Assembly: GCA_965649765.1 (NCBI GenBank) | Contig: OZ287751.1 | Span: forward strand, 65,720,001 to 65,784,000 | Origin: Bispira polyomma | Taxonomy: Eukaryota | Length of the DNA: 64,000 nucleotides | Direction: 5' to 3' | Shown here: positions 4,864-29,545 of the stretch, in pieces | Numbering within the stretch: position 1 is the first letter of the stretch | Layout: each line of letters begins with the position of its first letter | The notes under the pieces: generated by a model | The model's input: only the letters and a program-made list of their open reading frames with translations | What the model was told of the DNA's origin: nothing | The model's database searches: none | Translations under genes and position numbers: made by a program

Positions 4864-5224
4864 GGGGTGGTATTCACAAAAGGGATTAAATCAGATCAAA
4901 TTTGAAAAAAAGATCATCTTTTTGGATCAGCTGGGCTGGTATTCACAAAATATTTGATCTGTTTGTTTTTTTTGATCAAATAATGGATTAACTTTGATCT
5001 ATCCAACTTGGTAGATTAACTTTGGATTAGCACAGATCAAATATGGCTGACATGAAATGTTTAGGGGAAGACAGATAAAAAAACAGATCAAATATTTTGA
5101 TCTTTTCAGATCAAGTGATCTTTGCTTTGTGAATACTATTTTGATCCAAGGATCACTTGAAACTTTTTTCTCAACTTTGAGATGATCTTGATCTGATCTT
5201 AATCCTTGTTTGTGAATACCGCCC
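4864..5224. mobile_element. MITE with ~35-bp terminal inverted repeats (Harbinger-like)
   Basis: Left ggggtggtattcacaaaagggattaaatcagatcaa; right ttgatctgatcttaatccttgtttgtgaataccgccc. Confidence 0.7.
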
Positions 5225-5832: not shown

Positions 5833-8800
5833 CTGCTGTACTTTTACACCTTCTGTAAGGCTAGACTTGGCTATTTGCTGTCCATATTGTGCACTGATGT
5901 AATTAACGTTCTTCTGATACCAAATGTACCACTTGTCAGTTTGCATTCCTCCTGCTCATTACATAGTGTTTTCATCTTGTATATAGTAGCCACAGACTAC
6001 ACCCCTCTCTCCCCTCTCCCCCCTGTGAAGGATTGACAGCTGACTGCTGTGATTGACAGGCCCCGCCTCTATTTCATAATCCCCTGACCTGTTGGGGAGC
6101 CTCATTACTGTAAACCTAGACCAAATCCTGGGGACTAATTACCTATATAGCCCATGTGGCTCTTCAGGGAAAGAGCTTCTAGCTTATCCACTACCTTATT
6201 GTATTCAATGGCATTTTTGTGATTCCAGAAGTCACAGGGCCAATACACAGTTACATACATGCACTAGACTTGTTGACCTATGATTTCCTGCGGTAATCTA
6301 ACCAGAAAAACTAGATCATTTGGAATGATTACTGTTAGAGTAAGGAATCTAAATTTAGCCACTGAATCTGAAATTTGTCACATAGAAAATGTTGTGATTT
6401 TAGTAGAATTGGGGGTAATAGTTTGGTGAAATTGAGATTTTTGTGACTATTTTGCCTTACTTACCGGTACATAAATTCCTGTTATTTTTAGCTAGTTTTT
6501 ATTGATTTGACTTAAATTTTAGAGGTGGCGAATTTCAGATAGAGTGGCAAATTTTAGATTCTTTTATCCCCTGGGATGATTACCAGGAGATCAATTAATC
6601 ACATTATCAAATTTGTACACTTGTTATCTACAGAAAGAAATGCTACTTACCATAGCAGTCACAGTTTGATACAAAGGTTTATAGAGATAACCTTTTTCTC
6701 CCTATTTATCATATCTATTACTAGGCTACTGAGTATGTATGTGAGTATGACTTGTATTCTGACATTAGAACGTACACCAGCAGAATTATTAACACATCTG
6801 CAGCCATTATACTGAAAAGTGTTTTTAAATGTCAGCTGCATAGATAAAAAGAAGTGAACTCTTCCAGAATTATACAGTTACTTCTGTTTAAAATGAATAC
6901 AAGTAAAAAGAACTATCTATAAGATAACAATTAGCACTCTAATCTTTCTTGGTTAATTAACCCCATTGATGTGTGTAACCAACTTGATTATATAGTGGCT
7001 CTGATGACCAGTTACAATGGTGGTCATTCTATCTCTGGAACACTATCTCCATTGGCAAATTAAAGATCCTTGGGGACCTTGACAAATGGTCATCCTTAAG
7101 CAAGCCTAGGTGCCTATAGTGGCTGCCCATGAGGGAGCGAATTTGAAATTACTCTATGGTATATAAGTGCACTATAAGAAATGTTTTATTTCATTATAAA
7201 ATTCATGGATCTTTGAAAGAAAACATTTTCTTGGCTTCCCAAAGAGTTTCATCACTTCAAAATATCTTGAAATACTTGTTTTCCCTTTTTAAGTCGAAAC
7301 CTGAAGAGACCAGGAAGAATATCTTAACTTAAGCATGATTTTCTCTTTATAAGGGAGATTTGACAGGACAATGCCTTCATCAGACTGTAAATTCATCTTT
7401 ACATGTAGGGAAAATGACTTAACAGAGTTCTACTTAAGGGACTCCACTGAAAATATATTGCACCTGTATGATGACACTTCAATAATGACTTCATGTATAA
7501 TTTTTTTATAAGGGGGGAGTCTACTGACAATTTTCTATTGCAAGGAACTGAAGAGAAATATGTCTGCATGCGGGCAGGCATAGGCTCTGTGTGTCTATTA
7601 TTACACTAATGACTTTCAAGACCCATACTAATGTCCACTTATATTAACTATGAAAGACAACATCTTACTAGTAGTACACGTTTTTTTATTAGTGGAAATT
7701 TTAGGCAGAATAAAATTTTACTATTTTGAAGAAACTCACTGGCATTAAATTTCATTAATTGGCTTTTTTTCATGCTTGAATTCTATATATTTTACTACTT
7801 GCTTAAAAATTTATTTTTAAAAATCCAAGCTCTTGAGTTAAAATAGCTAAAATTACTCTCTAGTGAAAAGTTCTAGTGATACAGTAATCAAAGACTAGAC
7901 TCAGTTGACTCCAAACATAAATAGTGTGAATTCTGAAGACATTGGAAAACTCTAAGAGAAACATAATACACTTAGTTTCAATTACTTGACACAAATCAAT
8001 GAAACTGCACCAGAGATGAATTCTTTCAAATGCAAATGATCCTTTACAAATTATTACCGGTAAAAATAGGAACAGAATGTCTAAAACTGTAGTGTTCCCC
8101 TTGAAATGCAAACTTTTCACATTTTTTTATTTTACTTTTGACACATCTATAAGCTGCAGCAAGTCCTTAGACATATCATGCAGTTGCACAATGGACCTGT
8201 CTATTTATACCTTCACCAAGTTGATGACAGTATTCTAGTGCTTATTGCTTGGTGAAGCATTGATTTGGCATGATCAGGCTTATTTGGGCGTTTGGTGTTG
8301 GCCGTCAAATGTGCCCTTGTGAGTTTTTGTAACTTAAAATTGAAGTGTTTCATGTCATTAAACAAAACATACTTTCTTTTGTTTTCTTCATTTTCAAATT
8401 CAGTTCCTGGGTTTATATTCTCGGGTAAAATCCAAAAATTCCAGAGAGAGGCTTTCAATTTTTACTTCCATATATGGATATTGCCAACCAAAAATACCAC
8501 ACCACCTTTTCTTTGAGGAGACTTGGCGAAAATGAGGTCCAACCATTATCTAACATCAAATGCAAAATCTAGTTTAAGGAACATAACAGCACTATTGTTA
8601 AATTTGTAGTAAACCTTAATAAAGTCTCTCCCTTGCTAACACCCTACCATGTTACATCCTCCATAATTCTTAAGGGTGAGTTGAATTTGAATTTAGTTGG
8701 GGTTTAAGTCACTTTTAACAGTTTAGGTTCATCACGACGGCCAGATTTAACAGTGAAAAATCCCAGTACTGAAGCACTATAAACCACCGGTCTTTAGAAA

Positions 8801-10705
8801 AAAGAGGATTCAAACCCACACTGGTGAGAAACCAGTGATTATACAGTGCTTCTAATGACTAGGCCACCATGGCCCTTTATAGGTGAAGAAAACTGTGTGT
8901 GGCTAAACATGGGTTTGTTCAGGATTAAAGTATTAATTGTGTCTAATAAAATTACTGGTCAAGGTTAAATTTAGACATTTATGCATGCACATTGTACTTG
9001 ACTAGTCTGGGTTCTATTTATTTATCAGGTTATAATTACTGTTCTGGAGTCCGTTTCCATGGTTACATGTACCCAGTATTACTCTGTACTTGCAGGCTTT
9101 GCTTTCTAACAGCCTGGTGTTCTCAGGTTATAGTCACTGTTTTGGAGTATATATCACCATGGTTGCATGTACCCACTATGTCTTTGTACTTGCAGGCTTT
9201 GCTTTCTACCAGCCTGGTGTCCTCTTTGGACTACTCCTATGGTTCACCAAACACAATTGGGCCCTCTTCTCAAGTTTTGCCTCTCTACTGTTGTCAGGTG
9301 AGTGATTCATGTGACCTGTTCTACTAGGGATAATTAACATTTTAAAAATTTAGTTGGGTTTTATGTTGCTTTTAAAAGCTGAAGTCATATATCGCGTAGG
9401 TCAGATCCAATAGTAGAAGAAATCAGTACTGAAGCCAATGTGTAAACCACCTACCTACGGCAAGTACCTGACAAACTTTCCCACATGAAGGAACAAACAG
9501 GATTTAAACCCACATTAGTAATAGACTAGTAAATGTGAAGCAAGCACTTGTGATGACTAGGCCACCGCAGATAAAACCAGGTCACAATTCATAAAGCTTT
9601 TTTTGTAAAACTACCTGAAGGAATGCGTCATATCTGTAAGGCATAAAAACCTACTTCTAATCATTCATTTGTTATTTGCGAAATCTTTCATTATATTAAA
9701 ACTGCACTAACAAAACACAAATATTCTAGATATATTATGTATGGAAAGTTTAGTGTACTTTACAGCTGTTATTTTTCTATATTTTCTATACATTGTTTAC
9801 ACCTTTTCACAAACCCTGTTATCTGTCATAGTTTTGAGTGACTTAATACTTTTCTGATATGACAATTGATATATTTTGGAAAATTAATTATAATTTTGTG
9901 GTTGAATTTTTATATTTTTCAGTTATTGTCCTCACTACATCTATATATACATGTAAATATTTCAGTTATCTTACTTACATCTGCTATATATATATTTTTC
10001 AGTTTTAAATTTCTTTTCAATTATACTTTTCACTACATGTGCTACATATTTTTTTCAGTTATCTTCCACACTACATCTGCTGTATATTTCAGTTACATTG
10101 TCTTCACTACATCTATTATATACATTTTTCAGTTATCTTCCTCATAACATCTGCTATGTATATTTTTTGTTTTTCAGTTAACTTCCTTACTACATCTGCT
10201 GTATGTTTTTATCATTACAGTTATTTTCCTTGATTACCTAAGTTCTATATTTTTTTCAGGTATCTGAACTATTTGTTGTTGTTATTTTTAGTTATGTTAA
10301 TTATTTTTTGTTGTTTTTCCAGTCATACTCCTCACGACCTCTGTGATAATGAAAGCCCTCGCGGTGTGCCTTAACAACTGTGGTGAGGTGTACGACAACA
10401 CTAATAGACAATCCAACGCCCAGCCCAACCCCTTGCTAGCAGTACTAGGGATGACGCTCTGTCTCGCCACCACTGGCATGATCTGCCTCATGATCTCCTT
10501 CTGCCGCCGCCCCGAGAAGGAGCGGGAGGAAATCGAGCCACAGCAGAGCGATCTGCTCCAGCATCCGATGCACTACCAGTCAAGTCTGCCATACCACGAA
10601 GGTTACAAGAGACACAGTCCCACAGAAGGGACCTCCCTTAAGGAGATTCAAGAGATTCCCTTTCAAAGAAACGCATATAGCAAGGGGCTTCCCCAGAGGA
10701 TGTGA
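5833..10705 (+). CDS. 3' part of an unidentified multi-pass membrane protein gene, antisense to ANAPC2
   Basis: Exon 9196-9297 (tgcag/GTGAGT) and terminal exon 10323-10705 (long pyrimidine tract + AG, GC-richer than flanks) join in frame. A candidate 22-nt exon 5833-5854 (ttttcag/GTAAGG) fits the phase but is less certain. Product LLYFYTFCFAFYQPGVLFGLLLWFTKHNWALFSSFASLLLSVILLTTSVIMKALAVCLNNCGE...LLAVLGMTLCLATTGMICLMISFCRRPEKE... has about 3 hydrophobic helices and a polar tail. Start not found. Confidence 0.7.
6030..6070 (+). promoter_or_regulatory. Candidate cis-element: two PBX/PREP-MEIS-type sites plus a GC box
   Basis: GGATTGACAG 6030-6039, TGATTGACAG 6050-6059, GCCCCGCCT 6060-6068. Motif match only. 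Confidence 0.3.
6340..6573. mobile_element. Putative MITE
   Basis: Inverted repeats gaatctaaatttagccactgaatctgaaatt and aatttcagatagagtggcaaattttagattc. Confidence 0.5.
7000..7195 (+). mobile_element. SINE-like 3' fragment with a LINE-type tail
   Basis: Homologous to 29160-29365 (ctc.gatgacca.tta.aatggtggtc...ttaaagat.cttggggac...taagtgc.ctataa.aaatgt). Confidence 0.55.
8681..8876 (-). mobile_element. tRNA-derived SINE (family A)
   Basis: Same tail, core and head as 35030-35247. Confidence 0.75.
9058..9226 (+). repeat. 100-bp duplication of the acceptor and start of exon 9196
   Basis: catggtt.catgtaccca...tgtacttgcagGCTTTGCTTTCTA.CAGCCTGGTGT occurs at 9058 and 9158. Confidence 0.85.
9345..9570 (-). 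mobile_element. tRNA-derived SINE (family A)
   Basis: Same tail, core and head as 35030-35247. Confidence 0.75.
9905..10345 (+). repeat. Degenerate ~35-45 bp array resembling the acceptor and start of exon 10323
   Basis: Recurring tttttcag/ttatcttcctcactacatctg-like units resemble the real tttttccag/TCATACTCCTCACGACCTCTG. Confidence 0.7.
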
Positions 10706-10885
10706 GAACCGATCCGTAGGGGACCTCCCTCAAGAAGATTCAGAAGATTCCCTTCTAAAGGAACACATATATCAAGAGGCTTCCCCAGAGGATAGGAGAA
10801 ACAATCATAGGGGACTTCTCTCAAGGAGATATCCTTCCAAAGAAACACATATAATGCAAGGGGCTACTCCAGAGGATGCCAGAAA
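10628..10885 (+). repeat. Three ~92-bp copies spanning the nested gene's stop codon
   Basis: GGGACCTCCCT.AAG.AGAT...CCAGAGGAT starts at 10628, 10720 and 10811; TGA 10703-10705 lies in copy 1. Confidence 0.85.
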
Positions 10886-12994
10886 GTGAGCACAGGATGG
10901 AAAGTTAAAAAAAAAAATAATGGAATATCTGTTTTACCTAGAAAAAATTCCACACTTTGCAAAACTCAAAATCAAAGTTTATACTTTAGAAATATTACTT
11001 GATATGTCGAACAACGTTTTAGGGATTATTTTAGCATTAGTTATTGTATAAAACATCAAAATTATTAGGAAAATCAAAGTCAACTGCAACCCTTCGAGGA
11101 TGTGTTTGAGGATGCAGTACCATTTCTATTATCAACACACCTTGGCAAAAGCAAGATTTGGAACATTAATAAAAGCATCCAGGCATTTTCACTGGTAATA
11201 CTTAAGGTTTTACTGTATTAGCAAGGTTGTTTTTTAAAAACTTTTTTCTCAGTCATTATCACAATCATTAATCATGTGTGTATATATATATATATATATT
11301 CATCCCTTTCTTGCAAAGCATTTAGTCATTGTATGGTTAAAATATTCATGGAATGCAATAAATAATATATAAAGACTCCAATATTGTATTATGCATTTTT
11401 AATGAGCAACAACAGAATCAATTAACCAAATGAGAAGTCCAATACCATAGCCAAAGTCGTAAGGATGGATGTGGGGATGTACAGGAGGGAACTATGGGGG
11501 AAAAGCAGCTTTTAAGATATACATGTATGTCTGAAGTTTTCTCATCAAGCCAGAAAGTGTTTCTAGTGATCTAAGCTCAACTGGGAGACTATTCTAAAAT
11601 ATGGGGACAGCAATTGATATCAGCAGTATCAGTGTGAATTTTAAATGTGGATGTGAATGACAAAACCATACATAGCATCAAATATATATTCACAAACATT
11701 CTGCGAATATTATATTTTCTTAGTACATCAGCCAATCTGAGTCTTTAAAACAATATTTTCAGCCAATCAAATGGGTTGATGCTTGATATTACAGACTAAC
11801 ACCTTTTGTAAATACAGCCATTGGTGTATGCAGTAGGACTTTATGCAAACCTGAATGTGCTTTGTAGCTGAAATCTGTTTAGCCAAATCTAAAGGAACTC
11901 AAAAAAGATCTCCACTTCCAAGAGTATATCTAGTTAACAGGGAACAATATTTTTTTGCATATGTCTTGAATGGACCACAATCTGAATTAGGCTGACAATG
12001 CAATTTTTCACTTAAATGAGTTTTACTTTATAGGTAGGTGTCACTGTGTTTAGCATAGGTTGCAAATCTGGTCAAGTTTGACTTTAAAATCACCTTTAAC
12101 ATGTCTTGTGTCATGCCATGACAGGCACTTCACTGGTGGAGGAAATCAGAACAGGATAGTTGGCTTAGGTTTTTTTCTATTTTGCAAAACCAACAGTCTT
12201 CAGCAAGTCTACTGTCAACTTTCCCACATAGATACCAGGTCTAACTTAGTCGTAACACTAGTCTAAACTATTAAACACTGCCTACTGTTAGTCTTAGTGG
12301 TAAGAGCAGAAACCCTTTCCATTGGCACAGATCACTTTTAAGACTACAAAGTTTAAAGGGGAAAACCTGGTTAACAATCACTTGGAAAACTTCAGAACCA
12401 GTTGTTGGTGTCAGAGTTAATTTTTAAAAGTTTTCACTGTCTACACAATACTTGCAAGATTTACCGGGTAAATGAAATTTTTTTCATACTTTCTGAAGGA
12501 ATATCAACTGCGAAGTCCATCAGTCTTAAACAGTTGTGCTTTTATTCTGTGCTTTAATACACTCAACATAGTAAAGGGTCAGTGAATTTGTTTTTGCGTT
12601 TTAGTTTAACATTCTTCTGATTTAAATTTTTTTTAAGAACTGGTTCTAGTTTTTTGATAAACCATCAATCAGTCAAGGAAAGTCCACAGCCCAAAACTTC
12701 AGCTCTAAAGTATCAATACTTATTTGCTTTTCTTTACACCGATTCTGTATTTGTCACATTTTCCCTCTTCATAACTAACAACATCCCTCATCCACAAACG
12801 TGTTCAAAATACCACAGTCTCACAGCTCGCCCTTCCTCTCCCACCCTAAACCCCCCCCCCCCCCCCCCCCCACGCCCAGCAGGTGTTTTATAAATGTCCT
12901 AGCCCCCTTGTTTACTTGACTTCTGTACTAAAGAAATCAGAGATAGTATATTATCTACCCCCATCCAAATCCTAAGAGGGTCCCCCAGTCCAGA

Positions 12995-13215
12995 AACAAG
13001 AGTTGTCTGTTTAAAAACATACACAGATGCAGTGTGAATTACACTATAAGATTGATAAGGCACCCCTACAAATATTAATCTGAAACTCTTCAGATTCGAC
13101 AGATTGATGATCGCTTCTAACCAATCCATGAAGTCTTTGTATCTTATTTCGAAGATGGCAGCACTTTTTTCAGAATAAAAACATTTGGCTGGGCCTGATA
13201 AAAACGGGCTGCCAA
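12995..13215 (+). repeat. Dispersed repeat, also at ~35890-36105 and split across 46660-47050
   Basis: Shared acaaga..gttgtc.ttta.aaa...cagtgtgaa and gctt..aaccaat.catgaa...aagatgg. Confidence 0.55.
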
Positions 13216-14189
13216 TTTTTTTGGCGTTCTTTTTCTATCCGATAATCACACATTTGTCTGCTATGATAGATGACTCTTTTGACAAGTAATTTGATTTACT
13301 TTGACTTGGCCATTGCACTACATATCTCTCCATGGTGTTAATCACGGATTTCTGACAAAGCAAATGTTATTTTTTCTATTAGCCACCAGTCTTTTTCTCC
13401 CGTGTGATTAGATACAATTGTGTTCTTTAGTTAAATCTAAATGTTTATTGATTCCTCAGACAGTGAGTTTTCCCACCACAGTCTAAAGACACATATTACA
13501 CAACCCTAATCTGGGACATATCAAGAGAATTTGCCAAGGAATCAAAAGAGGAAAAATCAGTTACTACCTTAAGGAAAAGACTGTTTACGTGGGAAGATGT
13601 ACCACCAACGATTTGTCGCAAATGTCAAAGTTGACTGTAAAAGCTGAATTTGTCACCGGAATAGCCATTTTTTTGGCTTGAAATGAATAGTGGTAGAGTT
13701 CTGTTTCAACATAGGGAGGGAGGAGGTCACTTCAACACCAATAACTTGAAATGTAAAAAGTAATTACAGAGTTTGGACAAAGTATACATATAACCTTAGG
13801 TCGTTGAAACAGTTTTTCATACTAATTCAGTGACAATTTAATTTCTATATTTGCCTAATTTTAGCAAATCCACATATTTTTTTCCACTTTAACCCCCCCA
13901 AAATTTTCAAGAATGATCATCATTTGATATTTAACCATACAAATTGCCCTTGACTTGTGACACAATCCAATACAACATTGTGAACTATGTTTTAGGGGCT
14001 GTATTTACTTAGTCCTTAGTGAACTATGTTTCTGTAGTACATGAAATAGTTTTCAATAATACATTACTAAATTTATAAAATTTGCATCGTCCAAATCTGT
14101 TCGGCACAATCCTAGTAGTACTGTGTCTTTTCTATATATAAAGCAAGTCTAAAACAATTGACAAAACTTGTACAGAACTGTAGCTATAT

Positions 14190-14492
14190 AAGAGTACATT
14201 ATAATACCTTGTATCAAAGGTTCAAACACGATAGAGTACATTATGACACAGTGTATCAAAGGTTCAAACACGATAGAGAATATTATGACACAGTGTATCA
14301 AAGGTTCAAACACGATAGAGAATATTATGACACAGTGTATCAAAGGTTCAAACATGATAGAGTGCATTATGACACAGGGTATCAGAGGTGAAACACAATA
14401 GAGTACATTATGACACAGTGTATTATAGGTTCAAACACGATAGAGTACATTAGGACACCGAGTATCAAAGGTGAGACATGAGTACATTACGA
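14190..14492. repeat. 42-bp minisatellite, about 7 copies
   Basis: Unit gtatcaaaggttcaaacacgatagagtacattatgacacagt; it explains the repetitive ORFs at 14149-14391. Confidence 0.9.
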
Positions 14493-15351
14493 CATTACAA
14501 CCCTCACAAACAAGCGTGCCATAAAGTGTAACTATAAATAGGACGCCCTGTTAAGAGTAGCTGCAACATATGAAAAGAAACAGGATAGCATAGAAGAACA
14601 CACATTAGCATGTGTAATGTCCACCCCATGAACCTTTTGGAACAATTGCACAGTAGTCTTACAGGACTGTTTTGTTTGTAAAATATATCAACAATGCTCC
14701 AAAATTTATTACTATACATGTAAATTATTTCAACTGCAAGGACAAAATGTCATCGGACAAAATACCGAGGGGACAAAACGGCAGTCAAAATTGCAAGGGG
14801 GACAAAATGCTGTCTAACTAAATGGTACATAACACATTTACACAAGCACTGCCTAGTAGTGTACATCATGTAACAGATTCCTGAAAAAAGCCCATCAGAA
14901 AAAATGTCCATCAAGTGAATCACATCAGCAAAAAATCCCATCAGGAAAATTGGCCATCAGCTAAAGTGATGGGTGGGAAAATCGGCCATCAATTTTGCAA
15001 AATTTCTTCACAACAGATAATTTAACTATTATTTATAAAAATCTGATGTAAGGTAATGATAAACTACATTTACAATTGATTAAGGTCCACTTTTATTTCA
15101 GGTTTATGTATAAGTTTCATAAGTTTATTTATTTAAATCAAAGGAATAGTGCATAAATTTCATGTTATTTTATTTGTACCAAAAGAAGGGTTCATAAGTT
15201 TCCTAATTTTTTATTTACAACAAAGGAAGGGTGTATGTGGTGTGTCTACTCAGGCGAGATCAAGAAAAAGCTATTGTTCGTTGTATAATCTGTGCGTGAA
15301 TTCTTTGAAAGCTCAGAAGAAATCAATTGATGGGCAGTGTGTGAGAGTAAC

Positions 15352-16607
15352 AACAAATTGCTCTATCTCGCATGGTTCAGGAGATAGAAGCAAATTTGTG
15401 TTTTTCCAGTTTTGGCAAAAATTCGAAAATTCAAAATGGCCGCCATTTTTGGGGAGAGGAAAATTTTTTGAAAATTGCCTATGGTACATCTTTTAGATCC
15501 ACTGTGGGTCGAAAATTTTGACGAAATCGCTCTATCTCGCACGGTTAAGGAGATAGAAGCAAATTTGTGTTTTTCCATTTTTGGCAAAAATTCGAAAATT
15601 CAAAATGGCCGCCATTTTTGGGGAGAGGAAATTTTTTGAAAATTGCCAATAGTACATTTCTTAGATAGTCTGTGGGTCGAAAATTTCGACGAAATCGCTC
15701 TATCTCGCACGGTTAAGGAGATAGAAGCAAATTTGTGTTTTTCCATTTTTGGCAAAAATTCGAAAAATCAAAATGGCCGCCATTTTTGGGGAGAGGAAAA
15801 CTTTTTGAAAATAGCCAATAGTACATTGATTAGATACCCTGTGAGTCTAAAATCTCAACGAAATCGCTCTATCTCGCACGGTTAAGGAGATAGAAGCAAA
15901 TTTGTGTTTTTCCAGTTTTGGCAAAAATTCGAAAATTCAAAATGGCTGCCATTTTTGGGGAGAGGAAAACTTTTTGAAAATTGCCTATAGTACATTGCTA
16001 AGATACCCTGTAGGTCGAAAATTTTGACGAAATCGCTCTATCTCACACGGTTAAGGAGATAGAAGCAAATTTGTGTTTTTCCATTTTTGGCAATAATTAG
16101 AAATTTTTTTTCAAAATTACTAAGAGTACATTGATTAGATACTCTGAGGGTCGAAAATTTCGACGAAATCGCTCTATCTCGCACGGTTAAGGAGATAGAC
16201 ATATTTATGTTTTTTGCTATGTAGCTATTACTACTAAAAGTAGCTAAGTAGCCATTGCTGAGTCAGTTATATAGCTATTATCACTAAAAGCAATCCCAAG
16301 CAAGCTATTGGCCTAACTATTGGTCATACCAAATTTGGTAAAGATATGTCAAATATTTTTCCTTAAAATTCCCGGAAACAAAAGAAGTACATAAAAGTAA
16401 GTAAGTAGCTATTACTCAGTTAGCTATGGAGCTATCTTCACCAAAAGCAATCCCATGCAAGCTATTAACCCAATAAACACCCATACCAAATTTGGTAAAC
16501 ATAGGATAAATACTTTTCCTTGAAATGACCGGAAACCAAACGTGACGGACGGCAGACGCCGGAAAAAGCAAAAATAATATGTCCACCCCCCACTGAGGTG
16601 GACATAA
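15352..16607 (+). mobile_element. Non-autonomous Helentron/HINE-like element with internal ~170-bp satellite (~5 copies)
   Basis: Repeats cgctctatctcgcacggttaaggagatagaagcaaatttgtg... at 15360-16200, a GACG microsatellite remnant near 16543, and a terminal hairpin TATGTCCACC..GGTGGACATA at 16578-16606. Family assigned from architecture only. Confidence 0.7.
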
Positions 16608-17085
16608 CTACCACAATAGTGGACGTTCTACTCTGTATTATGTAATAACTATAAAAACTATTTTCTGCAGTATAAAGCTTGCAAGCTTACCCTACCATTT
16701 TAAACTGATATTTATCGTTGTTCTACATATGACTTTCTTTACTGGACTACAATATAGAAGCTATCTTCAGTAGTTTTCCTTGAAATGAGTGTTTATGATT
16801 TTTTAATTGGCAGCTACGGCAGCCACCTTTGTTGCATTTGGCCCTAAAACCTGCCAAAGCATGCTATACACATGTTAAACCAATGTATTATACTTGGTGA
16901 GGATATCTAGAGTAATTTTTCATTAAATGAGTGGAAACTGTTTTTACGTTGATGACAGCCATCGTTTTCCTCAGAAATCAGTGCCTAAATCAATGCCAAG
17001 CAGGCCATGTCCTTGACAACCTGTGTATTAAATTGGGGGAAGATATCTGTAATTGTTTTCTTCCAAATGACCAGAAAACACACTT

Positions 17086-17456
17086 CTGTTCTATGTACCT
17101 CACACCTTACCTCCTCTGTTGACTGTTTTATCTATCTCACACCTTACCTCCTCTGTTGGCTGTTTTATGTATATGACACCTTGCCTCCTCTGTCAGCTGT
17201 TCTATCTATCTCACACTTACCTTCTCTGTTGGCTGTTCTACCTATCTCATACTTTACATCCTCTATTGGCTGTTCTATCTATCACACACCTTACCTCCTC
17301 TCTCGCTGTTCTATCTATCTCACACCTTACCTCCTCTGTTGGCTGTTCTATCTATCTCACACCTTACCTTCTCTGTTGGCTGTTCTATCTATCTCACACC
17401 TTACCTTCTCTGTTGGCTGTTCTATCTATCTCACACCTTACCTCCTCTGTTGGCTG
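17086..17456 (-). repeat. Tandem array (37 bp unit) spanning the ANAPC2 exon 10 donor
   Basis: Unit CAGCCAACAGAGGAG/GTAAGGTGTGAGATAGATAGAA. Donors at 17441 (real), 17404, 17367, 17330, 17294, 17257, 17220, 17184 (GC variant), 17147, 17110. Confidence 0.95.
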
Positions 17457-20400
17457 CTGCTGGCCTTTATTCTCCTTTTCTTTCTTCTCTGCCATGTTGG
17501 TATTCAGCCTCTTCGAGTCAGCCACATCTTTTAACATCACCTCACAGGAGTGAAGCTGTGTCTCTCCAAACCTGTGGTAAAATATATCTGTTACCATAAC
17601 ACATGTAGACACCTGTACAAGACTGTATTGTATTAAAATTTATACTCAGTGCAATTATCTACCTTTATCTGGTATTTAAAAAAAGCTAATTACCATTTTT
17701 TCACTGTTAACAGCCAACCAGCAAGAGTTACCTATCATTCCCCAAACTTAAGCGATAGGCTTGAGAATAATTATTTACCAATGTCCCAAAGAGCTTTAGC
17801 CTGCCACTGGGGAAAAGGCACAATGACCCAATCACATAGGGCAGCCATATTTAGTGGTAATCTAAGCCACTATGTATCTGCCTGTACTCATTCGCCCCAG
17901 ACTTGGATCAAACATGCGTCATCTGTGTTCCTGAGTGAGTGTGTTACCCACTGGTCAAAGTGGTGGATAAATTAGGTCTAGGGTGCATACTTGCACACTA
18001 TTACACACTGGGTATTCAACGAGCATTCGAGACTCACTGAAAGACTCCATTTTACTAGGAATCGTGTTCATATTTCCAACTTCATTCCTCAAAAGTAATG
18101 GGTTATCACTCACGCAATGTTCAATATACATAAGAATGATCACACACCTGAGTTTGAGTAGTTCTGGGTAACACACCTGTATCTTGTTACACACCTGAGT
18201 TTGAGTAGTTCTGGGTAACACACCTGTACTTTGTTATACACCTGAGTTTAAGTAGTTCTGGGTAACACACCTGTACTTTGTTATACACCTGAGTTTAAGT
18301 AGTTCTGGGTAACACACCTGTACCTTGTTACACACCTAAGTTTAAGTAGTTCTGGGTAACACCCCTGTACTTTGTTACACACCTGAGTTTGAGTAGTTCT
18401 GGATAACACACCTGTACCTTGTTACACACCTGAGTTTGAGTAGTTCTGGGTAACACACCTGTACCTTGTTACACATCTGAGTTTGAGTAGTTCTGGGTAA
18501 CACACCTGTACCTTCTTACCCACCTGAGTTTGAGTAGCTCCAGGTAGCGTATTTCTTTCTCTGTATCGTAGTTAAAGTGTGTGAGTATCCTGTCAGCCAG
18601 TAGAGTCTGGTACTCGGTCACAAACAGCTCCTTACTGCCGTAAATGTTCACCAACATACTGATGATGTCAGAGCTACGACGACTGGACGACTTCACTGCA
18701 AACAACACAATAGATCACAAATTTATAATGATGTAGTGTTATTGCTGGTACTAATGAGCAAATTGGTTATGAATCGTGAGATCGATGTTAAACACGAAAA
18801 TATATCAATATCAGCTGATATCAGTGTAAATTGCAGAGTTACTAATAAGCTATGTTCTTTTTTATTGCCACCAGGACCTGAAGGCCAAAATTTTACCATC
18901 TTTGGTCAAATCATCAGGCCCAAATCTTAGATTTAAGATTAAAACTCTGCTAAGACCTTAAAAGAATATTAGGTCTGTATTCTAAGAATATTCGCGCATA
19001 TGACCCCATTTAAGCCTTCTATAGTGTCATCATGTGCTGTTTTGTACTAAAATGGAATATATTGTCTACCATTAAGAGCGGAAAATTTTTTTTCAATAAA
19101 AAAAAAATGGTTTAAAAAAACTTTAAAAAGTTAAAAATGCTCCACTTTTTTTTTAGTGATTTAAATCAATTGAATCAAAAACAACCCTGATGGAATGTTA
19201 ATGAATATTTGTCACGTACATGGATCAGCATCCACAGGATCCGGCTGCCAGTTCTCCCAGTCACTCGTATCATCATCGCTATGGTAACTCTCATCTAAGA
19301 CTAGAGGCTGAGCTTTCACCAACTCATCACTGAGTTCTGTGTTACCATCTTCTGTCAGGGAGGAGACGATACAGCGGACAGTGTCCTCACGATGTCTAAA
19401 GGGATGGACAGAAGGTATTAAAAACATACATACAGAAAACAGTGTCCTTACAATGTCTGAAGGATAGACAGAAGGTATTAAAAACATACATACAGCAAAC
19501 AGTGTCCTCACAATGTCTGAAGGACAGACAGAAGGTATTGGACATACATACAGCAGACAGTGTCCTCATGATGTCTAAAAGGATGGACAGAAGGTATCAA
19601 ACACATACATACAGCGAACTGTGTCTGACAATGTCTAAAGGGATGGACAGAAGGTATTAGACACATACATACAGCGAACAGGTATTAGACATTTGTTTTC
19701 ACATACATACAGACTACTGTATACTCGCAAAGTCTAGAGGGATGGACAGAACGTATCAGACACATACATACAGCGAACAGTGTCCTCACGATGTCTGAAG
19801 GGTTGGACAGAAGGTATAAGACACATACATACATCAAACAGTGTCCTCACGATGTCTGTAGGGATGGACAGAAGGTATCAGACACATACGTACAGCAAAC
19901 TGTGTCTGACAATGTCTGAAGGGATGGACAGAAGGTTTAAGACACATACATACAGCCTACAGGTATGAGACATTTGTATACACATACATACACACTACTG
20001 TATACTCGCGACGTCTAGAGGGATGGACAGAAAGTATTAGACACTGCTATACACATTCATATAGCCTATTGTGTCTACTACTAAATACAGTAAAGTTCAC
20101 ATAATTACTTTAATTTGCCATGTTAGAATTAAAATAACACATTCCAAAGCATGGTATTAGGTAATTTTTACCATTCTTGGAGCGTAGAAAGACTCAGGCT
20201 TCCCTTTAGTCTTACTATGGCTTTAATCACAGTTAAAATTATGTCACAGTATAAATGTAGATTATTAGAAACTTTAGATTTACGAGAGCGAAATTGAGTG
20301 CATTGAATCATATATTTGGATAATAAAAGTTTGGACAATAGGATTTTCTAGATTTTGTTTGGATAATAGAAGAGGCCTTTTAGTGTAAAACAATAAGAAA

Positions 20401-23400
20401 ACTTTACAGTCATTTTCACAATTAAGATTTGTTGGGCTCTGAGTAGTCAATGAATATTAAAACTGCACTATCTCTAACCCACTGATTTAGGACTGGTATT
20501 CATGAGTCTGAGACTTCATGTGAATACCAGTCCTGGAGTGTTGTGGGAGACAGAGGTCATTACCTGAGGTATGTTCTGACTGGCTGACAAACTAGGTCAA
20601 GAAGAACACCCTTAGGGTCAAGGACACGCAGAGCTCTGATGGCTGAGATGTACGCTGTCAGGATGTCACCTGTGTTTACACCTGGACAGGAAATAATAAC
20701 ACATGTATGTATTAATACAGTAGACCCTCTGTTATTTAAACTTCTATTATATGTAAACATTACACTGGTGGCAAAATGGGATCTGGAAAAACTTTTCTCA
20801 TCATAGAGAGGTGTCCGCTATTCAGAGGTGTTCAGTAATTAGATTTTTTACTGTATTTTCAATTTTATCAACCAATTTTCACCTGTGTTTTCACCTGTGG
20901 AGGAGAGAAAGGATTTCAGTGATAAATATAAGAAGACTTCTATGTATTTCACAGTGGATATTCAAATCCCTTGGAAACACCAATCTCAATGCCAATCCCT
21001 TGGAAACTTCAATCACAATTCGAATCCCTTGGAAACTTCAATCACAATTCCAATCCAGTGGAACGATTGGACTTTCAAAATATTGGCTTTAAAATAAGGA
21101 TAATATTTTTCTCTAGTGGAAACTGTAATTGGAAAATCAACTAAGAACCTTTCTCTTTAGAGTGGCCTACCCCAGCACCTTAGCATTTGCTCCCCTGCCA
21201 GACGCTTTCACTGGTTAAGAGATTTTTCTTGTATTTTAAGGATAATCAGTTCTTGGACAACAACACCTGAGAGGATGCATTATATCAATCTGGCACTGTA
21301 CAAATTTATTAATAACATGCATTCATTGACCAATAAATTGGTTACATATCTTTCATGCAATGTAACAAAACAAGAAACATTAAATTATACGTGGACAGAT
21401 TTTATCATAAAAACAGGCCCACGAAAACAGACATCCAGTGACTAGCTACATGAGTAATATTCCAAAATTTTATCAAATTTTTATCAGTTTTTGTATAATC
21501 CTAACATAATATTGAGATTTTCGCAGATCTCGCCAGTTGGAGCTGTACTGTATGCAGGAATGAGGCGATAGATTTTATCAATGGAAAAGTGTAGTACTTC
21601 CTTGGTTAATGAATGAAAGTGGGCACAGCTTATATATATCTATCAGCAATTATGTAATATAGACATTTTCGTCACTTTCTATGCTGTGCCCAACTCGATA
21701 AAAATACTAATACTAGATTTACCCGGGTGCAAGAGTCGTGTCTCCAAAGCAGTCCTCAAAGATGTGACCAGTGAACTGCGAAGGTTAATCTTCTCCAGAC
21801 AAGCCTTGAGATCCAGTAAGGCTGGCTCTGACTCTGGATACTCAATGATGATGTCAAACAACTGGCCAATACAGAGCTAGGGAGTACACAGAAAGAGATA
21901 ATGTCTCAACGCCATTCACAGTTGTGTTCACATACATAGCCAGTGCAGTAACTTTCTTTAGTAGATATTCTAAATGTTAAGTTACCTTTTTTTGACTGCA
22001 CAGTACACATAGGGTACCTAGTGGGAGGAGGTTATGAAACCACAATAGAAAAGTTCCACTCTATATGTTCCACCCATGTACTCATTGTACTGAAAACCCA
22101 CAGTACTTGGCAAACTTTCTGAAATAACGTAAAGCAATGGGAAAGGGGAAGAGGTAAGTAACTATTACATCACTGTGGTCCCTAAAATACAGATGCTTAA
22201 AGATTACAACTAATCAGTAACAACAAGATTTTTTAACCTGCCACTGGGGGATAGGACTCAATTACGGAGAACATAACCTTCTCAAGTGATCCTTTCTAAC
22301 TGCTATGAATCCAAATCATAATGTACTTGGGAATCCCCAGGCTGGGATCAAAACCATGTCGTATTAGGATGGAACAAAACCTTACCTTTTGGCACAAGGT
22401 TACAGATAGCGAAAGTGACTATAACACCCAACAAAATAATTTTGCCATTAAATAACTACCTCATGTATAATTTCTTAAACATGGAAGTATGCTGTACTAA
22501 CAATTACCTATTGTGAGGAATTAAAAGAAAATAAACCAATATTTTGAGGGTTGTTGACTGCTTGCTGAAAGACATAGGTTCTGGTGGTAACAATTGCCGT
22601 TGACTGGTTACGGACAACCTTAGGATCTTACCTTAGCAAAGAGCTGGTACATGTAGTGTATGAGTCTTCCTCTGTGAGCCTGTACTACAGTGGGGTCTGT
22701 GTTACCATACACCAGTCCTAGCCAGCCCACCACCTTACTGTCTAACCACTAAATAGACAACAGAAAACACAACATGTGGTGCATATGCGTGTCGGTTAAA
22801 TACGGGCCCCGTACTATATGCTAGTACTTATTTAAAACTGTTTTACTGATACCTTATATATAAGTTAACATTATTCATCAAATGGAAGATAGATCAAACA
22901 CAATAATCGCGATTCAGCTGTATATGGAGTGTAATTGTGTATTACATGGTAAAAGGTGCAAATTAATTAGGAACACTATAATTATAGTTATAAACATTAC
23001 TACAATAGGACCTGTATTATCCCAACATGTTTGGACTGTAAGATATTGTTTGTGTTTGGACTGTAAGATATTGTTTGGATAACAGAAGTTAGTAATAGAA
23101 AGAGTAATCTTAGTCTTAAGCAATAGGAAAATAATATAAATGTGGGAGAGTGAAACTTAGTTTGTAAAATTGAGAATATTTGAATAACAAAGGTTCTACT
23201 GATTAAAGATTAAACTTCTACTAAAACCTTGTATTTTAATAATAAAATATTGGGACTTAGAATATAGTTCCATATATCAAGTTATAGTTAATCGAGTTAC
23301 AGAGAGGCTACTGTATTTTAATACCAAGGGAGCATATTGTTAAACGTATACTCAGCTTAAACTCATACTCAACTTAAATCTTGATAAATCTCTAAAACCT

Positions 23401-26400
23401 GGATACAGAAAACATATCCAAAATCAGACTTCATATTAAAATTCAGTGTTGAAAGCTCTATTAAAACGAATGGTCACAAGTACAGGTTATTGCCATGCAC
23501 AAGGATTTCCACATAACCTATATTTAAGTTGAGTACAAAACATCAGTAAATTTTGAGAATGCCAGCCCAGAAGTTCAGATAACGGAGAATCTACTGTATA
23601 TTACACACACACACCTGCTGTAATATAGTTAGGTACTGCTTCTCAAAGTTCCCCTGACACGTGTGCTCGACATGTTGTTGTATACGAGCGTGGATGTGTG
23701 ATGTTACAGCCTCCCCAGATACACACTCCAGTAGACCAAGCTCACGTCTGCACAAAAACAGTATAAACAAGCAAATTCAGAGAATCGTTTTCCCCCATTT
23801 TGGGTGAAATCCATCACAGGGTATGGTCAGCAGCACCAACACAAAGTCAAAAAATTTGCACTAAAAAAACAGTTGCCATTAAAACAACTTGGGGATTCAT
23901 TAGATCTTACTCTGGGTAAGGGAGTTGGTCTGATGATCAGAAGGTCTAGGTATATACTTACAGCCACAGTGTTCAGTATGACCTCTAACTCCAAGTATGA
24001 CCTCTAAGTATATACTTACAGCCCCTGGTTGAGGTGGTAGAACGTGTTCAGTATGACCTCTAAGTATGACCTCTAAGTGTATACTTACAGCCTCTGGTTG
24101 GGGTGGTAGAATATGGTCAGTATGACCTCTAAGTGTATACTTACAGCCTCTGGTTGAGGTGGTAGAATGTGGTCAGTATGACCTCTAAGTATATACTTAC
24201 AGACTCTTGTTGAGGTGGTAGAATGTGGTCAGTATGACCTATAAGTATATACTTACAGCCTCTGGTTGAGGTGGTAGAAAGTGTTCAGTATGACCTCCAA
24301 GTATATACTTACAGCCTCTAGTTGAGGTGGTAGAATGTGTTCAGTATGACCTCTGAGTATGACCTCTATAAGTATATACTTACAGCCTCTGGTTGAGTTG
24401 ATAGAATGTGTTCAGTATGACCTATAAGTATGACCTCTATAAGTATATACTTACAACCTCTGGTTGAGGTGGTAGAACGTGTTCAGTATGACCTCTATAA
24501 GTATATACTTACAGCCTCTGGTTAAGGTGGCAGAATGTGTTCAGTATGACCTCTATAAGTATATACTTACAGCCTCTGGTTGAGGTGGTAGAATGTATTC
24601 AGTATGACCTCACAGTGACACTTCTCTCTCTCCTCCTCACAACCCTCACAGCGTAAACACTCCACCTCAGACTCATCCAGGTCTGAAAGTACATTGTAAA
24701 TAGTGAAGTAGGAGGGATGAGGGGCATTTTCTATAGCATAGGTGTGACAAGGGGGGAAGCTAAACACTCTATATCTGCATTATCTTAAATATAGGTGTGA
24801 CAAGGTGTAAGGTTGCTGTGATTAAATGAAGTACAGGGGTAGAGGTGAGGGGAGTTAAACAATAACTAGTTGTCTCAGGAAATAGAAAGCTAAATATAGG
24901 ATTCCTGAAGTAAAGATTTGGTAAGTTACACATTGGAGACATGCGATTAACTGAAGTACAAGTGCAAGTCATTAGGGAGCTAATCATTACATTACTTTGA
25001 TTACGTGAAGTACAGCTGTGACAAGATGGGTGAGCTAATACAGGATGTCCCCAATTACCTTAAGCTTAAATCATCTAAAATGCATATCATGCTATGTTCA
25101 CAGCTGTTGACATCTAAAACATGAAAGAGCAACTCTAACATATAGGACACATATACTTACATAAAGTCATAAACTATCACTTGAATTTTTTCTAAACATA
25201 TTCAAATGTGTCTCTACCTTTTCATATTACATTATTATATCATTGAAACACCCTTTTTACTTATTAAAGGCTGACAGTTTGCACACCTTAATCCTTGCAC
25301 CCTTTTATCCTTACCTGTGTGTGACTTTGTATTGTTGTCATACGCCTTAAACGAAAGTACATAGAAGTTGTTCAACGCGTCTATGAAGTGTTTATTGGCC
25401 TGGTAGAATACCACAGACTTCAGTAGGAGCATGATGTGCTTGTTTGGGTCTACATAGGGTAGGGCAGATGTGCAGGGCATATCTGTGATGTTCGAGGCAA
25501 TGTAGTTCTGTAGTACTCCCAGCCTCTGGACAGACGCCCAGTATTTGTCAACTTCGGAGAGCAGCTCATCGAAGGCAGTACTGAGCTGAGACACAACATC
25601 CTCCACTGGACTGCTAAAATGTCTCCAAAACTTGGGATGGAGCTCTGATGTCATCTTGTGCTGCAGCGTTTGGAGAAACCACTCGGTAATCACAGAGGCC
25701 ATCTGGTTTTCACACAATACATCAACAGCATGTTGTAACTCTGCTGTCTGCAAAAAAAGTGGGAGAAAAAAACCTTTTACAAATTATGTTAGCATAAAAT
25801 ATATATAGATAAGGATTTAAAAAATAGACACAATATTATAAATAGGACAGCGATGGTTGCAAAAAATTAAGGTCAGCTAGTTATTTGCCACGAGCGAATT
25901 ACTTGTATTGGCTCTGAATAGTTGTTAAATATTTTAAAATTGTTTATGCTACTGAAAAGCTGCTACAACTTAGTCATGATTTCCCCACTTCTAACTGTAC
26001 TTTGACTTGTGCTCAATAAGGTTTTATCTGGGTTTAGCACAATTTATTGGATTTTGTACCTTCAATCAATAGCAATAGTTCAGGAAAATTCTACTTGTAA
26101 TTGATAAAATGCCATGTCGGAAATGTTTTACCTTAATTTGTGTCAAAAATATGCCAAATTACAATGGTAGGCACAACTCTTTTCTCACCGGTGGCAGACT
26201 AAATAATGCCTAGAGGTGTATCAACTGATTTCGAGACATCTCACCCTGTATTCCAAAACCTGCTGTAAATTACAGGAAAGCTCGCCCTGTGATATAAGTT
26301 GCCCCAGATATTTAATTAAAGTAATATATAAGTACTGCAACATTATCACAAATATAGTTTTTACGGCCATGTTTTTACTCGAATTGTGGAAGAAAATATA

Positions 26401-26779: not shown

Positions 26780-27269
26780 CTCGACTTCAATCTAGAACTA
26801 ACTTTATCGGAATATATTTTGACAACTGGAATGTAGCCGGAAATATCAAATTATAGTTGTTACCAGGTCATAGATCAAGGTATTTTATGTGTCATTTAAA
26901 GATGTTACATACGGAATGTATAGTTTTAGATAATACCTTCTAGGGCTTGAGCTATATAGTTGCAACTTCTTAGCTAAACATTTTAAGTATATTTTCATTA
27001 AACACTTTGCCATTGGGCAGAAGACAGTCTCAACCTAGGAACTTATGGCATAACATGAAGGAAAACGTACTCCTCTTGTGATGAGAACAAAAATTTCCAT
27101 ATGTTTTTTGCTTAATTTTGGAAACACATTAATTGGATTGGAAACATTTTATGCAGCATAATGTTTACAATATCATATATAGTTACAAATGCAAAATTAC
27201 ATACCAATAATTTACACTACCCATTTCATAATGAAATATTCTCCTATCATCTTCCATAAACCTACCATA

Positions 27270-28103
27270 CAGAGTACCCCAGGGATCTATCCTTGGGCCT
27301 CTACTTTTCACCCTTTATACACATCCTCTCAGCATGCTCATCAATAATCATAATATGAAACACCACATGTATATCGGCGACACTCAAGACTATCTATTTC
27401 TCAACCCTCAAAATGCAAATAACATATTGATCTACCCGGCAGAATCAGAAACCACCTGTCGATGGATGCTGCGATAACTGTGGCTAACGCCCTTGTGAGC
27501 AGCCGCCTCAACTTATTTTGAGGATGCAGCCATTGCTTTTGTTTGGAGTAAACAAGTCACAGATTAAAAAGCTCTAGTCCATTCAAAACTACCTATGAAG
27601 GGTGATTTTTTACCTAGGTGGTTGCACAGACGTCACTCCCTACCTCAAAAAATTACAATGGCTGCCCATTCACTCTCGAATTTTGTTCAAATTTTACCTT
27701 ACCACTTTTAAGGCTGTAGTCACTCAACAGCCCTCCTACCTTGCTTCCCTTCTCTCCTTTAGTAACCGTAAGAGAGAAAACAGACTTTCTGTTTTTTCGG
27801 TCAGACCCATCAGAAAGGCGGGATCCAGAGCTTTCTGAATTGCAGCTCACTTGTTATGAAACAGTCACCTAGCTAGTTGACCTCAGATCAGTTGATACAC
27901 TCATCAGTTTCAGGAAAAAGTGTAAAACCTATCTTTTTAACCTTGCATACCCACCTTAGCTTCCCTCGTGCACGCTCCCACATCTTTCCTTACGACTTTG
28001 CTATGCCCACAGACTTTACGATTGGATCAATGATTCTGCTGTTGTGCTTTAGAAGATGCCTAGCATCAATAAAGTGCGTTAAAAATTCATAATAATAATA
28101 ATT
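27270..28103 (+). mobile_element. 5'-truncated, decayed L2/CR1-type LINE (RT C-terminus and 3' tail)
   Basis: VPQGSILGPLLFTLYT...HMYIGDTQ (degenerate YADDTQ), VTPYLKKLQWLPIHSRILFK, PSYLASLL, FRKKCKTYLF, and an (AAT)n tail at ~28090. Confidence 0.85.
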
Positions 28104-28359: not shown

Positions 28360-29545
28360 ATACTGTGTCAGTGTGTGTAGAGATTTTACTGTTACCGCTC
28401 TCCTGGGAAAAGTTTTACACACAGACTCCTGAAATTTTACAGGAATGTTCTTTATTTAAAAAGCTTACCTTTGAGTACTTTTGGCCTTATTTTTATAAAC
28501 AAGATGGCCGCCACAGGTGTTTCTTTAAAAATAATCAGGCTTTTAACTGTGCCTGTTTCTCAGTTGTAGAAGGTTGAATCTTTTTACAGGTGATATTTTT
28601 AACGGATATATATGTCCTGTATAAGCATGCAGACATTTAAACTTGAATTTCCTCATTCAAGGTCATCGACAGAGTGCCAAAGTACCCCAAGTGATCAATT
28701 TTGGCCAAACTTAAAAGTGCCTATATCTCGCTTAATATTAGTCCTAGATGTTTGGAAGCTGAAACTATGAGCGGGAAGCTTTTGATGTGCTTAGATTTGA
28801 CCTGGGGCCTCTCTTTCAAGGTCAAACAAGAATGGTCAAACTTAAAAGTGCCTATATTTCACTTATTATTGGTTCTAGAGGTTTGGAATATGAAACCAAC
28901 CTGTAGGTAATTAAGGCCTGGGAATCTTTTGATGTGGTCTGATTTGACCTTCGGCCCCTTATTCAAGGTCAGTCGTGGTCAAACTTAAAAGTGCCTATAT
29001 TTTACTTATTATTGGTCGTGGAGGTTTGGGATGTGTAACTAACTAAGAAATCATGGGCTTGTATTATTTTGCTGTGGTCAGATTTGACCTTGGACCCCTC
29101 ATGCAAGGTCAAACCAGTAGGCTAAACTTTAAAATGCCTATCTCACACTTATTATTGTAGCTCCGATGACCACTTAAAATGGTGGTCCTCTGTCACTGAG
29201 TAATATCTTTAATGGCAGATTAAAGATTCTTGGGGACATTAATAAATGTTCATCCTCAAGCACCTCGGCGCCCATAATGGCTGCTCTTGAGGAAGGGCAT
29301 TTGTAAGGACACTGTGTGCTGTAAGTGCTCTATAACAAATGTCCTATTTCATTTTCTATTTCATTATTGGTCCCACAGGTTTGCATTGTGAAACCCACTT
29401 GTGCCATTTAGGGCTTAGCATAAATGCCCTATCGGAAATAATAGGCTTCTAGCTTGGGTGCTAGCTAGGGTGGTTGCTAACTAGGGTGCTTTGTCTTTCT
29501 GGTGGATACAAATATGCATCGGTTCTCCAATGCTCTATGTCTTGT
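28360..29545 (-). mobile_element. Second satellite-bearing HINE-like element (~135-bp repeats, ~4 copies) with a nested SINE fragment
   Basis: ggtcaaacttaaaagtgcctatat recurs near 28703, 28834, 28977 and 29121; the minus-strand start is ACAAGAC at about 29544. Confidence 0.55.

What the first reader, a model, noticed from the sequence alone, without database searches (positions are those of the whole stretch)
9058..24611. Splice-junction-anchored tandem arrays: repeated amplification of exon/intron boundaries
Seen in sequence: six arrays with unrelated sequences and different periods (37, 47, ~58, ~60, ~40, 100 bp) in two genes on opposite strands each have a unit made of an exon edge plus the adjacent intron edge, so nearly every unit carries a copy of the splice site. 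Four of ten ANAPC2 exons are affected, with both donors and an acceptor involved. Arrays extend into the intron, leaving the CDS intact when the exon-proximal site is used. Splice junctions are a small fraction of the window yet host about half or more of its non-transposon minisatellites. Inference: either a mutational process targeted to splice sites (co-transcriptional breaks or R-loops with microhomology- or RNA-templated repair, then slippage expansion), or selection for banks of decoy sites that tune expression through unproductive splicing and NMD. It is also a possible route to intron or micro-exon gain. I cannot name a described system matching this, but could not search the literature.
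Basis: partly seen in the sequence, partly recalled or inferred. Interest (0 to 1): 0.9.

Follow-up and report, generated by a model that had tools for sequence, protein, structure and literature searches.

The report
Splice-junction "mirage" minisatellites, genome-wide enriched
In this invertebrate genome about one exon-intron boundary in six has been copied head-to-tail into the neighbouring intron; this repeat type was already named "mirage" in lancelets, and here it arises 4-6 times more often than ordinary intron repeats, for a reason still unknown.

Summary
Four ANAPC2 junctions (three donors, one acceptor) carry arrays whose unit is exon edge plus intron edge. Two more lie at acceptors of a predicted, homology-less gene nested antisense in a 65-kb ANAPC2 intron; one of these is degenerate. 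This is the known "mirage" minisatellite class of amphioxus (Adh3, globins, TnC, PGBD5), so it is not an undescribed system. My test on 134 myosin, kinesin and dynein exons elsewhere in the genome found the junction inside the first unit of a duplication at 26/130 donors and 18/127 acceptors, against about 3% of intron points: 6.4x (CI 4.2-9.3) and 4.5x (2.5-6.9). The excess survives GC matching and is larger for young copies. A close relative shares none of the comparable arrays and has its own at other junctions; Owenia, Ridgeia, Haliotis and an unnamed animal carry them too. Best reading: junction-biased small tandem duplication plus slippage, tolerated because the exon-proximal site stays in use. 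A selected decoy/NMD bank is weakly supported. No reads could be examined. The scan found the same thing three times before on other DNA of this genome.

The parts
25315..25747 (-). ANAPC2 exon a (first exon located; a 5' exon of about 25-35 codons was not found); no array
24571..24682 (-). ANAPC2 exon b; its donor is amplified
23944..24611 (-). Donor mirage, period 56-58: about 41 nt exon tail plus about 15 nt intron; 10 extra donors, all GT-intact, all behind an in-frame stop; 2-nt overlap at the ends
23615..23747 (-). ANAPC2 exon c; no array here, but an old donor array in the relative L092
22632..22748 (-). ANAPC2 exon d; no array
21723..21876 (-). ANAPC2 exon e (PF25773); no array
20564..20681 (-). 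ANAPC2 exon f (PF25773); only a weak partial acceptor look-alike about 200 nt upstream, below threshold
19369..20044 (-). Acceptor mirage, period about 60 (some 99-nt units): about 34 nt intron end plus about 27 nt exon start; 9 extra AG-intact acceptors, use of any gives a stop
19220..19395 (-). ANAPC2 exon g; its acceptor is amplified
18524..18695 (-). ANAPC2 exon h; its donor is amplified
18140..18547 (-). Donor mirage, period 47: about 23 nt exon plus about 24 nt intron; 8 copies, 7 with GT; the last copy stops 6 nt after the donor
17442..17571 (-). ANAPC2 exon i; its donor is amplified and opens a 65-kb intron that leaves the window
17086..17456 (-). Donor mirage, period 37: 15 nt exon plus 22 nt intron; 9 copies, 8 with GT; 3-nt overlap at the ends
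9025..9224 (+). Acceptor duplication, period 100 (71 nt intron plus 29 nt exon), two copies, in the predicted nested gene
9196..9297 (+). Predicted exon of a nested antisense membrane-protein-like gene (phase fits the next exon); no homologue found
   Evidence: sequence
9907..10348 (+). Old, degenerate ~40-bp acceptor array ending at the acceptor at 10323
10323..10705 (+). Predicted last coding exon of the nested gene (126 codons, one hydrophobic helix); single copy in the genome; unproven

Best explanation
These are mirage minisatellites. Step 1 (anatomy shown, cause inferred): a small tandem duplication of 30-130 nt arises from the local sequence, with one breakpoint in the last or first 10-75 nt of the exon and the other in the intron, often with 1-3 nt of overlap, as replication slippage or microhomology-mediated break repair would leave. 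Step 2 (rate shown, cause inferred): such duplications arise or first expand several times more often across splice junctions than inside introns, most likely because breaks or stalls in transcribed germline DNA cluster at junctions. Step 3 (inferred from mosaic units): slippage and unequal exchange expand two copies to 3-35. Step 4 (inferred; shown for amphioxus by RT-PCR): the exon-proximal site is still used, so the copies are intronic and nearly neutral; rare distal use gives a stop or frameshift. The arrays then decay and are replaced by new ones at other junctions.
For: Enrichment 6.4x at donors (CI 4.2-9.3) and 4.5x at acceptors (2.5-6.9), seen in all three gene families; GC-matched expectation about 5 against 26 and 18 observed; donor fold rises to 11-16 at high identity. 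Array edges fall in the last 75 exon nt 4.4x more often than in the first 100 intron nt after donors (p 7e-5), so protection from deletion near exons does not explain it. Controls: reverse complement 1/257, exon middles 0/222. The three window arrays tested are single-locus. Clean donor arrays end on a whole unit with 1-3 nt overlap. The relative L092 has different arrays, one old and interrupted. Published mirages gave no aberrant mRNA (PMC3087553, PMC3902484). TOP2-linked breaks are enriched at 5' splice sites in human cells (PMC9629710).
Against: No direct evidence for the cause of the junction bias; breakpoints are spread, not fixed (exon part 8-74 nt, intron part 2 to over 100 nt). The authentic copy is held by selection, which lengthens detectability by up to about 2x and inflates the high-identity folds. 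Splice dinucleotides in copies are kept slightly better than neighbouring bases, which strict neutrality does not predict. Splice sites in the sample were called by homology plus consensus, not from RNA. The sample is about 280 kb of three conserved gene families.
Confidence: 0.62

Rival explanations
1. Unbiased mutation plus biased survival: duplications arise evenly, but those anchored on an exon stay recognisable longer (one copy held by selection, re-copied by conversion) and are shielded from large deletions.
For: The genome is rich in tandem repeats: 13.9% of intron points lie in a duplication. Introns turn over fast and do not align with the relative. Intron-only arrays are about 2x commoner within 100 nt of acceptors than further away.
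Against: One conserved copy gives at most about 2x (inference), against 4.5-6.4x observed. Arrays starting just inside the intron after donors are not comparably enriched. Young copies are more enriched, not less.
Confidence: 0.2
2. Selected decoy banks: extra splice sites are kept because they tune expression through unproductive splicing and NMD, or add U1/U2AF binding that helps exon definition.
For: Most copies keep GT or AG (172/199 and 55/56). Copy-to-copy variation at donor GT is 0.041 against 0.065 elsewhere (Wilcoxon p 0.04; Fisher not significant). Nearly all distal uses in ANAPC2 give a stop or frameshift.
Against: No array is shared with a close relative at the 10 homologous junctions compared, of which one carries an array here. 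About 17% of junctions are hit across unrelated families. The amphioxus studies saw no aberrant transcripts. The retention signal is small and could come from re-copying of the intact junction.
Confidence: 0.12
3. RNA-templated copying: nascent pre-mRNA held at the junction by the spliceosome serves as template in break repair, so intact splice sites seed their own copies.
For: Copies hold exon plus unspliced intron in sense order; splice dinucleotides are slightly over-retained; 7 of 24 donor arrays end within 20 nt after the donor.
Against: Most arrays end on a complete unit like plain DNA duplications (14/24 donors, 11/20 acceptors). No polarity of growth from the authentic junction. The copies displayed continue with intron sequence, not with the next exon.
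Confidence: 0.05
4. Assembly artefact.
For: Raw reads could not be examined.
Against: Copies differ by about 6-16% and form ordered variant runs. The same kind of array occurs in five independent assemblies of other animals and is published for amphioxus, where re-sequencing argued against assembly error (PMC3902484).
Confidence: 0.01

Closest known systems
'Mirage' minisatellites of amphioxus (Adh3, Canestro et al. 2002, cited in PMC3087553; globins BflGb6 and BflGb9, PMC3087553; TnC and PGBD5, PMC3902484)
   Same: Tandem units span an exon-intron boundary and duplicate the splice site; donors and acceptors are both affected; unit sizes overlap (10-72, 60, 108, 150-160 bp published; 37-100 here); many but not all copies keep AG/GT; mechanism unknown; proposed as a route to intron gain.
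   Different: Published cases are a few lancelet genes with no background test that I could find. Here the host is a lophotrochozoan, about one junction in six is affected, and a 4-6-fold excess over introns is measured. Normal splicing and length instability were shown there and not tested here.
Intron creation by tandem genomic duplication (Rogers model; human variable internal tandem repeats at exon-intron boundaries, PMC2812944)
   Same: Tandem duplication multiplies splice signals and can change gene structure.
   Different: Those start from exonic or proto-splice-site repeats, in primate segmental duplications for the human set, and alter the transcript. Here an existing junction is copied and the predicted CDS is unchanged. 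No intron in ANAPC2 here shows a duplication origin.
Decoy splice sites / unproductive splicing coupled to NMD (from my own knowledge)
   Same: Non-productive splice sites in introns whose use would give a premature stop.
   Different: Those are typically conserved and regulated. These are unconserved, tandem and have no expression evidence.

Membership tests
Mirage minisatellite | Head-to-tail repeat with a minisatellite-sized unit (about 10-160 bp) | tested here: met
   TRF periods 37, 47, 56-58, 60, about 40 and 100
Mirage minisatellite | Unit spans an authentic exon-intron boundary | tested here: met
   Four ANAPC2 junctions fixed by phase and homology; the two in the nested gene rest on a predicted gene
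Mirage minisatellite | Copies duplicate the splice signal (many but not all keep GT/AG) | tested here: met
   10/10, 7/8, 8/9 donors and 9/9 acceptors intact
Mirage minisatellite | Locally derived, not a dispersed element | tested here: met
   Three arrays each match only their own locus; the tool warns that repeats and common words are skipped
Mirage minisatellite | Normal splicing preserved, no aberrant mRNA | not testable with these tools
Mirage minisatellite | Length instability between alleles or cells | not testable with these tools
   One assembly, no reads; turnover between species is shown
Conserved decoy / NMD-coupled splice element | Conserved between related species | tested here: not met
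   The relative L092 lacks the exon b donor array and has other arrays; the other three ANAPC2 arrays lie beyond the fetched DNA
Conserved decoy / NMD-coupled splice element | Distal sites used in RNA, rising when NMD is blocked | not testable with these tools
   No reads
Intron gain by tandem duplication | New intron whose ends resemble the flanking exon sequence | tested here: not met
   Three of the four affected introns are at positions shared with other phyla; the lineage-specific introns show no such similarity by eye

The most novel reading that the evidence does not exclude
A splicing-coupled mutational process in the germline of many invertebrates (annelids, some molluscs, lancelets) that preferentially duplicates DNA across functional splice sites, so that intact splice sites seed their own amplification and supply raw material for splice-site shifts and intron gain.
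Probability: 0.3. Interest if true: 0.8.

Novelty: new member of a known kind. Interest (0 to 1): 0.47.

Why it matters
Mirages were described from a handful of lancelet genes with the mechanism called unclear, and I found no genome-scale test in the library searched. A genome in which about 17% of junctions carry them, with a measured 4-6-fold excess and independent cases in other phyla, makes two open questions testable at scale: whether splicing leaves a structural-mutation footprint in DNA, and how the spliceosome picks the exon-proximal site among ten near-identical ones. In practice such arrays can mislead gene prediction and read mapping.

Tried and rejected
The original 2002 mirage paper and Zhuo 2007 are not held, so they are cited second-hand. 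Rejected or unsupported: dispersed-element origin; GC content as cause; a fixed breakpoint just past the splice site as the rule; polar growth from the junction (p 0.88); a strong donor-over-acceptor bias (20% against 14%, p 0.25); selection against decoy sites (copies do not lose GT/AG). The first ANAPC2 exon was not found by a small HMM. The nested gene has no Pfam, homologue or convincing Atlas match. The six innexin junctions tested carry no array. One locus (L017) had a donor called inside its array and one (L075) was marginal; both were dropped from the anatomy tests but remain in the enrichment counts.
Full report
Setting. The window is G000:C4:65720001-65784000 of a 1.035-Gb, 75-contig assembly, 30-39% GC. 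Summed exon-by-exon scores put Owenia fusiformis first among named ANAPC2 proteins, followed closely by molluscs and Ridgeia. The host is therefore a lophotrochozoan, probably an annelid (inference; an earlier scan note calls it a worm).

Gene structure. Nine minus-strand exons (25747-25315, 24682-24571, 23747-23615, 22748-22632, 21876-21723, 20681-20564, 19395-19220, 18695-18524, 17571-17442) have GT/AG ends and compatible phases. They cover Owenia ANAPC2 residues 36-561 in order and two hit PF25773. The rest of the gene lies 48-57 kb outside the window, after a 65-kb intron. The first coding exon was not found. Inside the long intron, on the + strand, two phase-compatible predicted exons (9196-9297, 10323-10705) encode a hydrophobic, membrane-like peptide with no homologue; that gene is unproven. 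The spliced model was searched exon by exon and never joined.

The arrays. TRF finds all six. Copy-by-copy listing shows 10 extra donors after exon b (all GT, all behind an in-frame stop), 8 after exon h (7 GT), 9 after exon i (8 GT) and 9 extra acceptors before exon g (all AG, all giving a stop). By a generic scoring matrix the copies score about as well as the authentic sites. No other ANAPC2 or innexin junction tested passes. The 100-bp doublet passes. The 40-bp array is old: it fails the strict test, but four copies match 16-17 of 26 exon bases, against 0.05% of background sites reaching 15. Three arrays tested match only their own locus. Junction arrays are 6 of 17 window blocks that I did not judge mobile-element-like, or 5 of the 8 strongest.

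Is it more than chance? I fetched 90 loci around Pfam myosin, kinesin and dynein matches, called 134 non-redundant exons by homology plus splice consensus, and asked whether the 40-mer across each junction has a copy within 400 nt on the intron side and none on the other side. It does at 26/130 donors and 18/127 acceptors, against 3.3% of intron points; controls gave 1/257 (reverse complement) and 0/222 (exon middles). The genome is rich in repeats: 13.9% of intron points lie somewhere inside a duplication, so raw overlap with repeats is barely enriched and only the array-edge comparison is informative. Locus bootstrap gives 6.4x (4.2-9.3) and 4.5x (2.5-6.9). GC-matched expectation is about 5 in each class. 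Folds rise with identity (donors 11-16x), and all three families contribute. An independent edge profile agrees: array starts fall in the last 75 exon nt 6.2x (donors) and 3.6x (acceptors) more often than in the intron, and 4.4x and 2.1x more often than in the first 100 intron nt (slightly overstated, because mirages mask part of the intron). 46 of 158 repeat blocks span a junction. The donor-acceptor difference is not significant (p 0.25).

Other species. A close relative (L092; exons 80-86% identical in DNA, introns unalignable) lacks the exon b donor array but has spaced copies of the exon b acceptor and an old, interrupted exon c donor array. The other three ANAPC2 arrays lie beyond the DNA fetched and could not be compared. 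An unnamed animal (L094) has five junction duplications in ANAPC2. Owenia has 2/26 junctions, Ridgeia 3/16, Haliotis 1/22, and six other species 0/124. The arrays are thus born independently and decay. With 15-20% of junctions hit, recurrence at the same junction is expected by chance.

Anatomy and mechanism. Copies hold exon plus unspliced intron. Breakpoints are spread, with median exon parts of 24-30 nt; most arrays end on a whole unit (14/24 donors, 11/20 acceptors), and clean donor arrays show 1-3 nt of overlap. This is the pattern of plain tandem duplication by slippage or microhomology repair (inference). A minority (7/24 donors) end within 20 nt of the donor, which only partly bears out an earlier scan note. 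Arrays show no polarity. Splice dinucleotides match the authentic site at 0.97 (GT) and 0.99 (AG), against 0.91 and 0.89 for exon-derived pairs, and intronic control arrays show no central peak. Part of this is expected because the authentic site cannot change. The fairer copy-to-copy test gives 0.041 against 0.065 for donors (Wilcoxon p 0.04, Fisher p 0.42) and is not significant for acceptors. So copies are not purged of splice signals, and any retention is weak. Human data offer a candidate cause, TOP2-linked breaks enriched at 5' splice sites (PMC9629710; see also PMC9645720), but nothing here tests it.

Comparison with what is known. Minisatellites whose unit spans an exon-intron boundary were named mirages in amphioxus Adh3 and found in globin, TnC and PGBD5 genes. 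Units of 10-160 bp, both boundary types, retained AG/GT, normal splicing by RT-PCR, length instability, an unclear mechanism and a model of intron gain are all stated there (PMC3087553; PMC3902484). I reached this match before consulting earlier scan notes, which say the same for three other windows of this genome; they are not independent evidence. The structural membership criteria are met; the expression and instability criteria could not be tested. Further literature searches found no genome-wide study, within a library that lacks most subscription papers.

Limits. No reads, so neither splice-site use nor assembled length is confirmed. No further DNA from the genome. The sample covers three conserved gene families, and a few splice calls may be wrong.

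Verdict. A real feature of a known kind in a new host group. The measured excess at junctions, still unexplained, is the part worth following. Interest 0.47.

Noticed in passing
window 1-17441 and beyond (G000:C4:65672000-65737441): ANAPC2 has a 65-kb intron after exon i; the last four exons lie 48-57 kb outside the window. The whole gene spans 6-22 kb in eight other animals and 90 kb in Glandiceps.
   Followed up: partly
window 9196-10705, + strand: Predicted membrane-protein-like gene nested antisense in that intron; two phase-compatible exons, no homologue, upstream exons not traced; both acceptors carry duplications.
   Followed up: partly
window 10628-10830: 92-bp repeat (2.2 copies) over the end of the predicted reading frame and the 3' flank of the nested gene; not at a splice site.
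   Followed up: no
window 32016-45108, - strand: Innexin gene (PF00876), at least four exons; none of the six junctions tested has a mirage, but a 95-bp intronic repeat (37794-38014) runs to within about 45-70 nt of an acceptor.
   Followed up: partly
L092 9041-10015: The close relative has an extra intron of about 970 nt inside exon a, at an AG|GT site, absent from the window and from the nine other named species examined: probably a recent intron gain, with no visible duplication signature.
   Followed up: partly
L092 13640-13920 and 16060-16590: Old degenerate exon c donor array in the relative, split by about 2 kb that includes a 146-bp repeat element; also two spaced copies of the exon b acceptor (11776, 12016) and, by eye, a short donor doublet at exon e (18590-18645).
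   Followed up: yes
L094 10780-19347: An unnamed animal (ENA ERZ25069859) has five junction duplications in 9 kb of ANAPC2: 51 x3, 82 x5, 61 x13, 69 x8 and one two-copy; two fall at junctions also hit in the window, with unrelated units.
   Followed up: partly
L093, L095, L100: ANAPC2 junction duplications in Owenia (2/26 junctions), Ridgeia (3/16) and Haliotis (1/22); none in Lingula, Tubulanus, Pecten, Ptychodera, Glandiceps or Acanthaster (0/124). One gene per species, so only a hint of patchy distribution.
   Followed up: partly
window 15355-16610: Composite 169-bp and 157-bp repeat element, also present at a different ANAPC2 position in the relative (77-89% identical), so a shared mobile repeat; similar blocks at 28773-29157 and 56648-57760.
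   Followed up: no
window 27235-27835, 54008-55861, 59704-60959: Broken mobile-element-like frames: a weak RVT_1 match at 27235 (E 1e-4); the others look transposase-like by eye only.
   Followed up: no
L093, L097, L099, L100, L102 (5' flanks): In five other animals ANAPC2 lies head-to-head with a cyclophilin gene (PF00160); I did not look for that gene in this genome.
   Followed up: no
L006, L007, L008: Three near-identical myosin loci on different chromosomes each show the same pattern of repeated exon-tail hits, suggesting that the 53-bp donor array predates their duplication.
   Followed up: no
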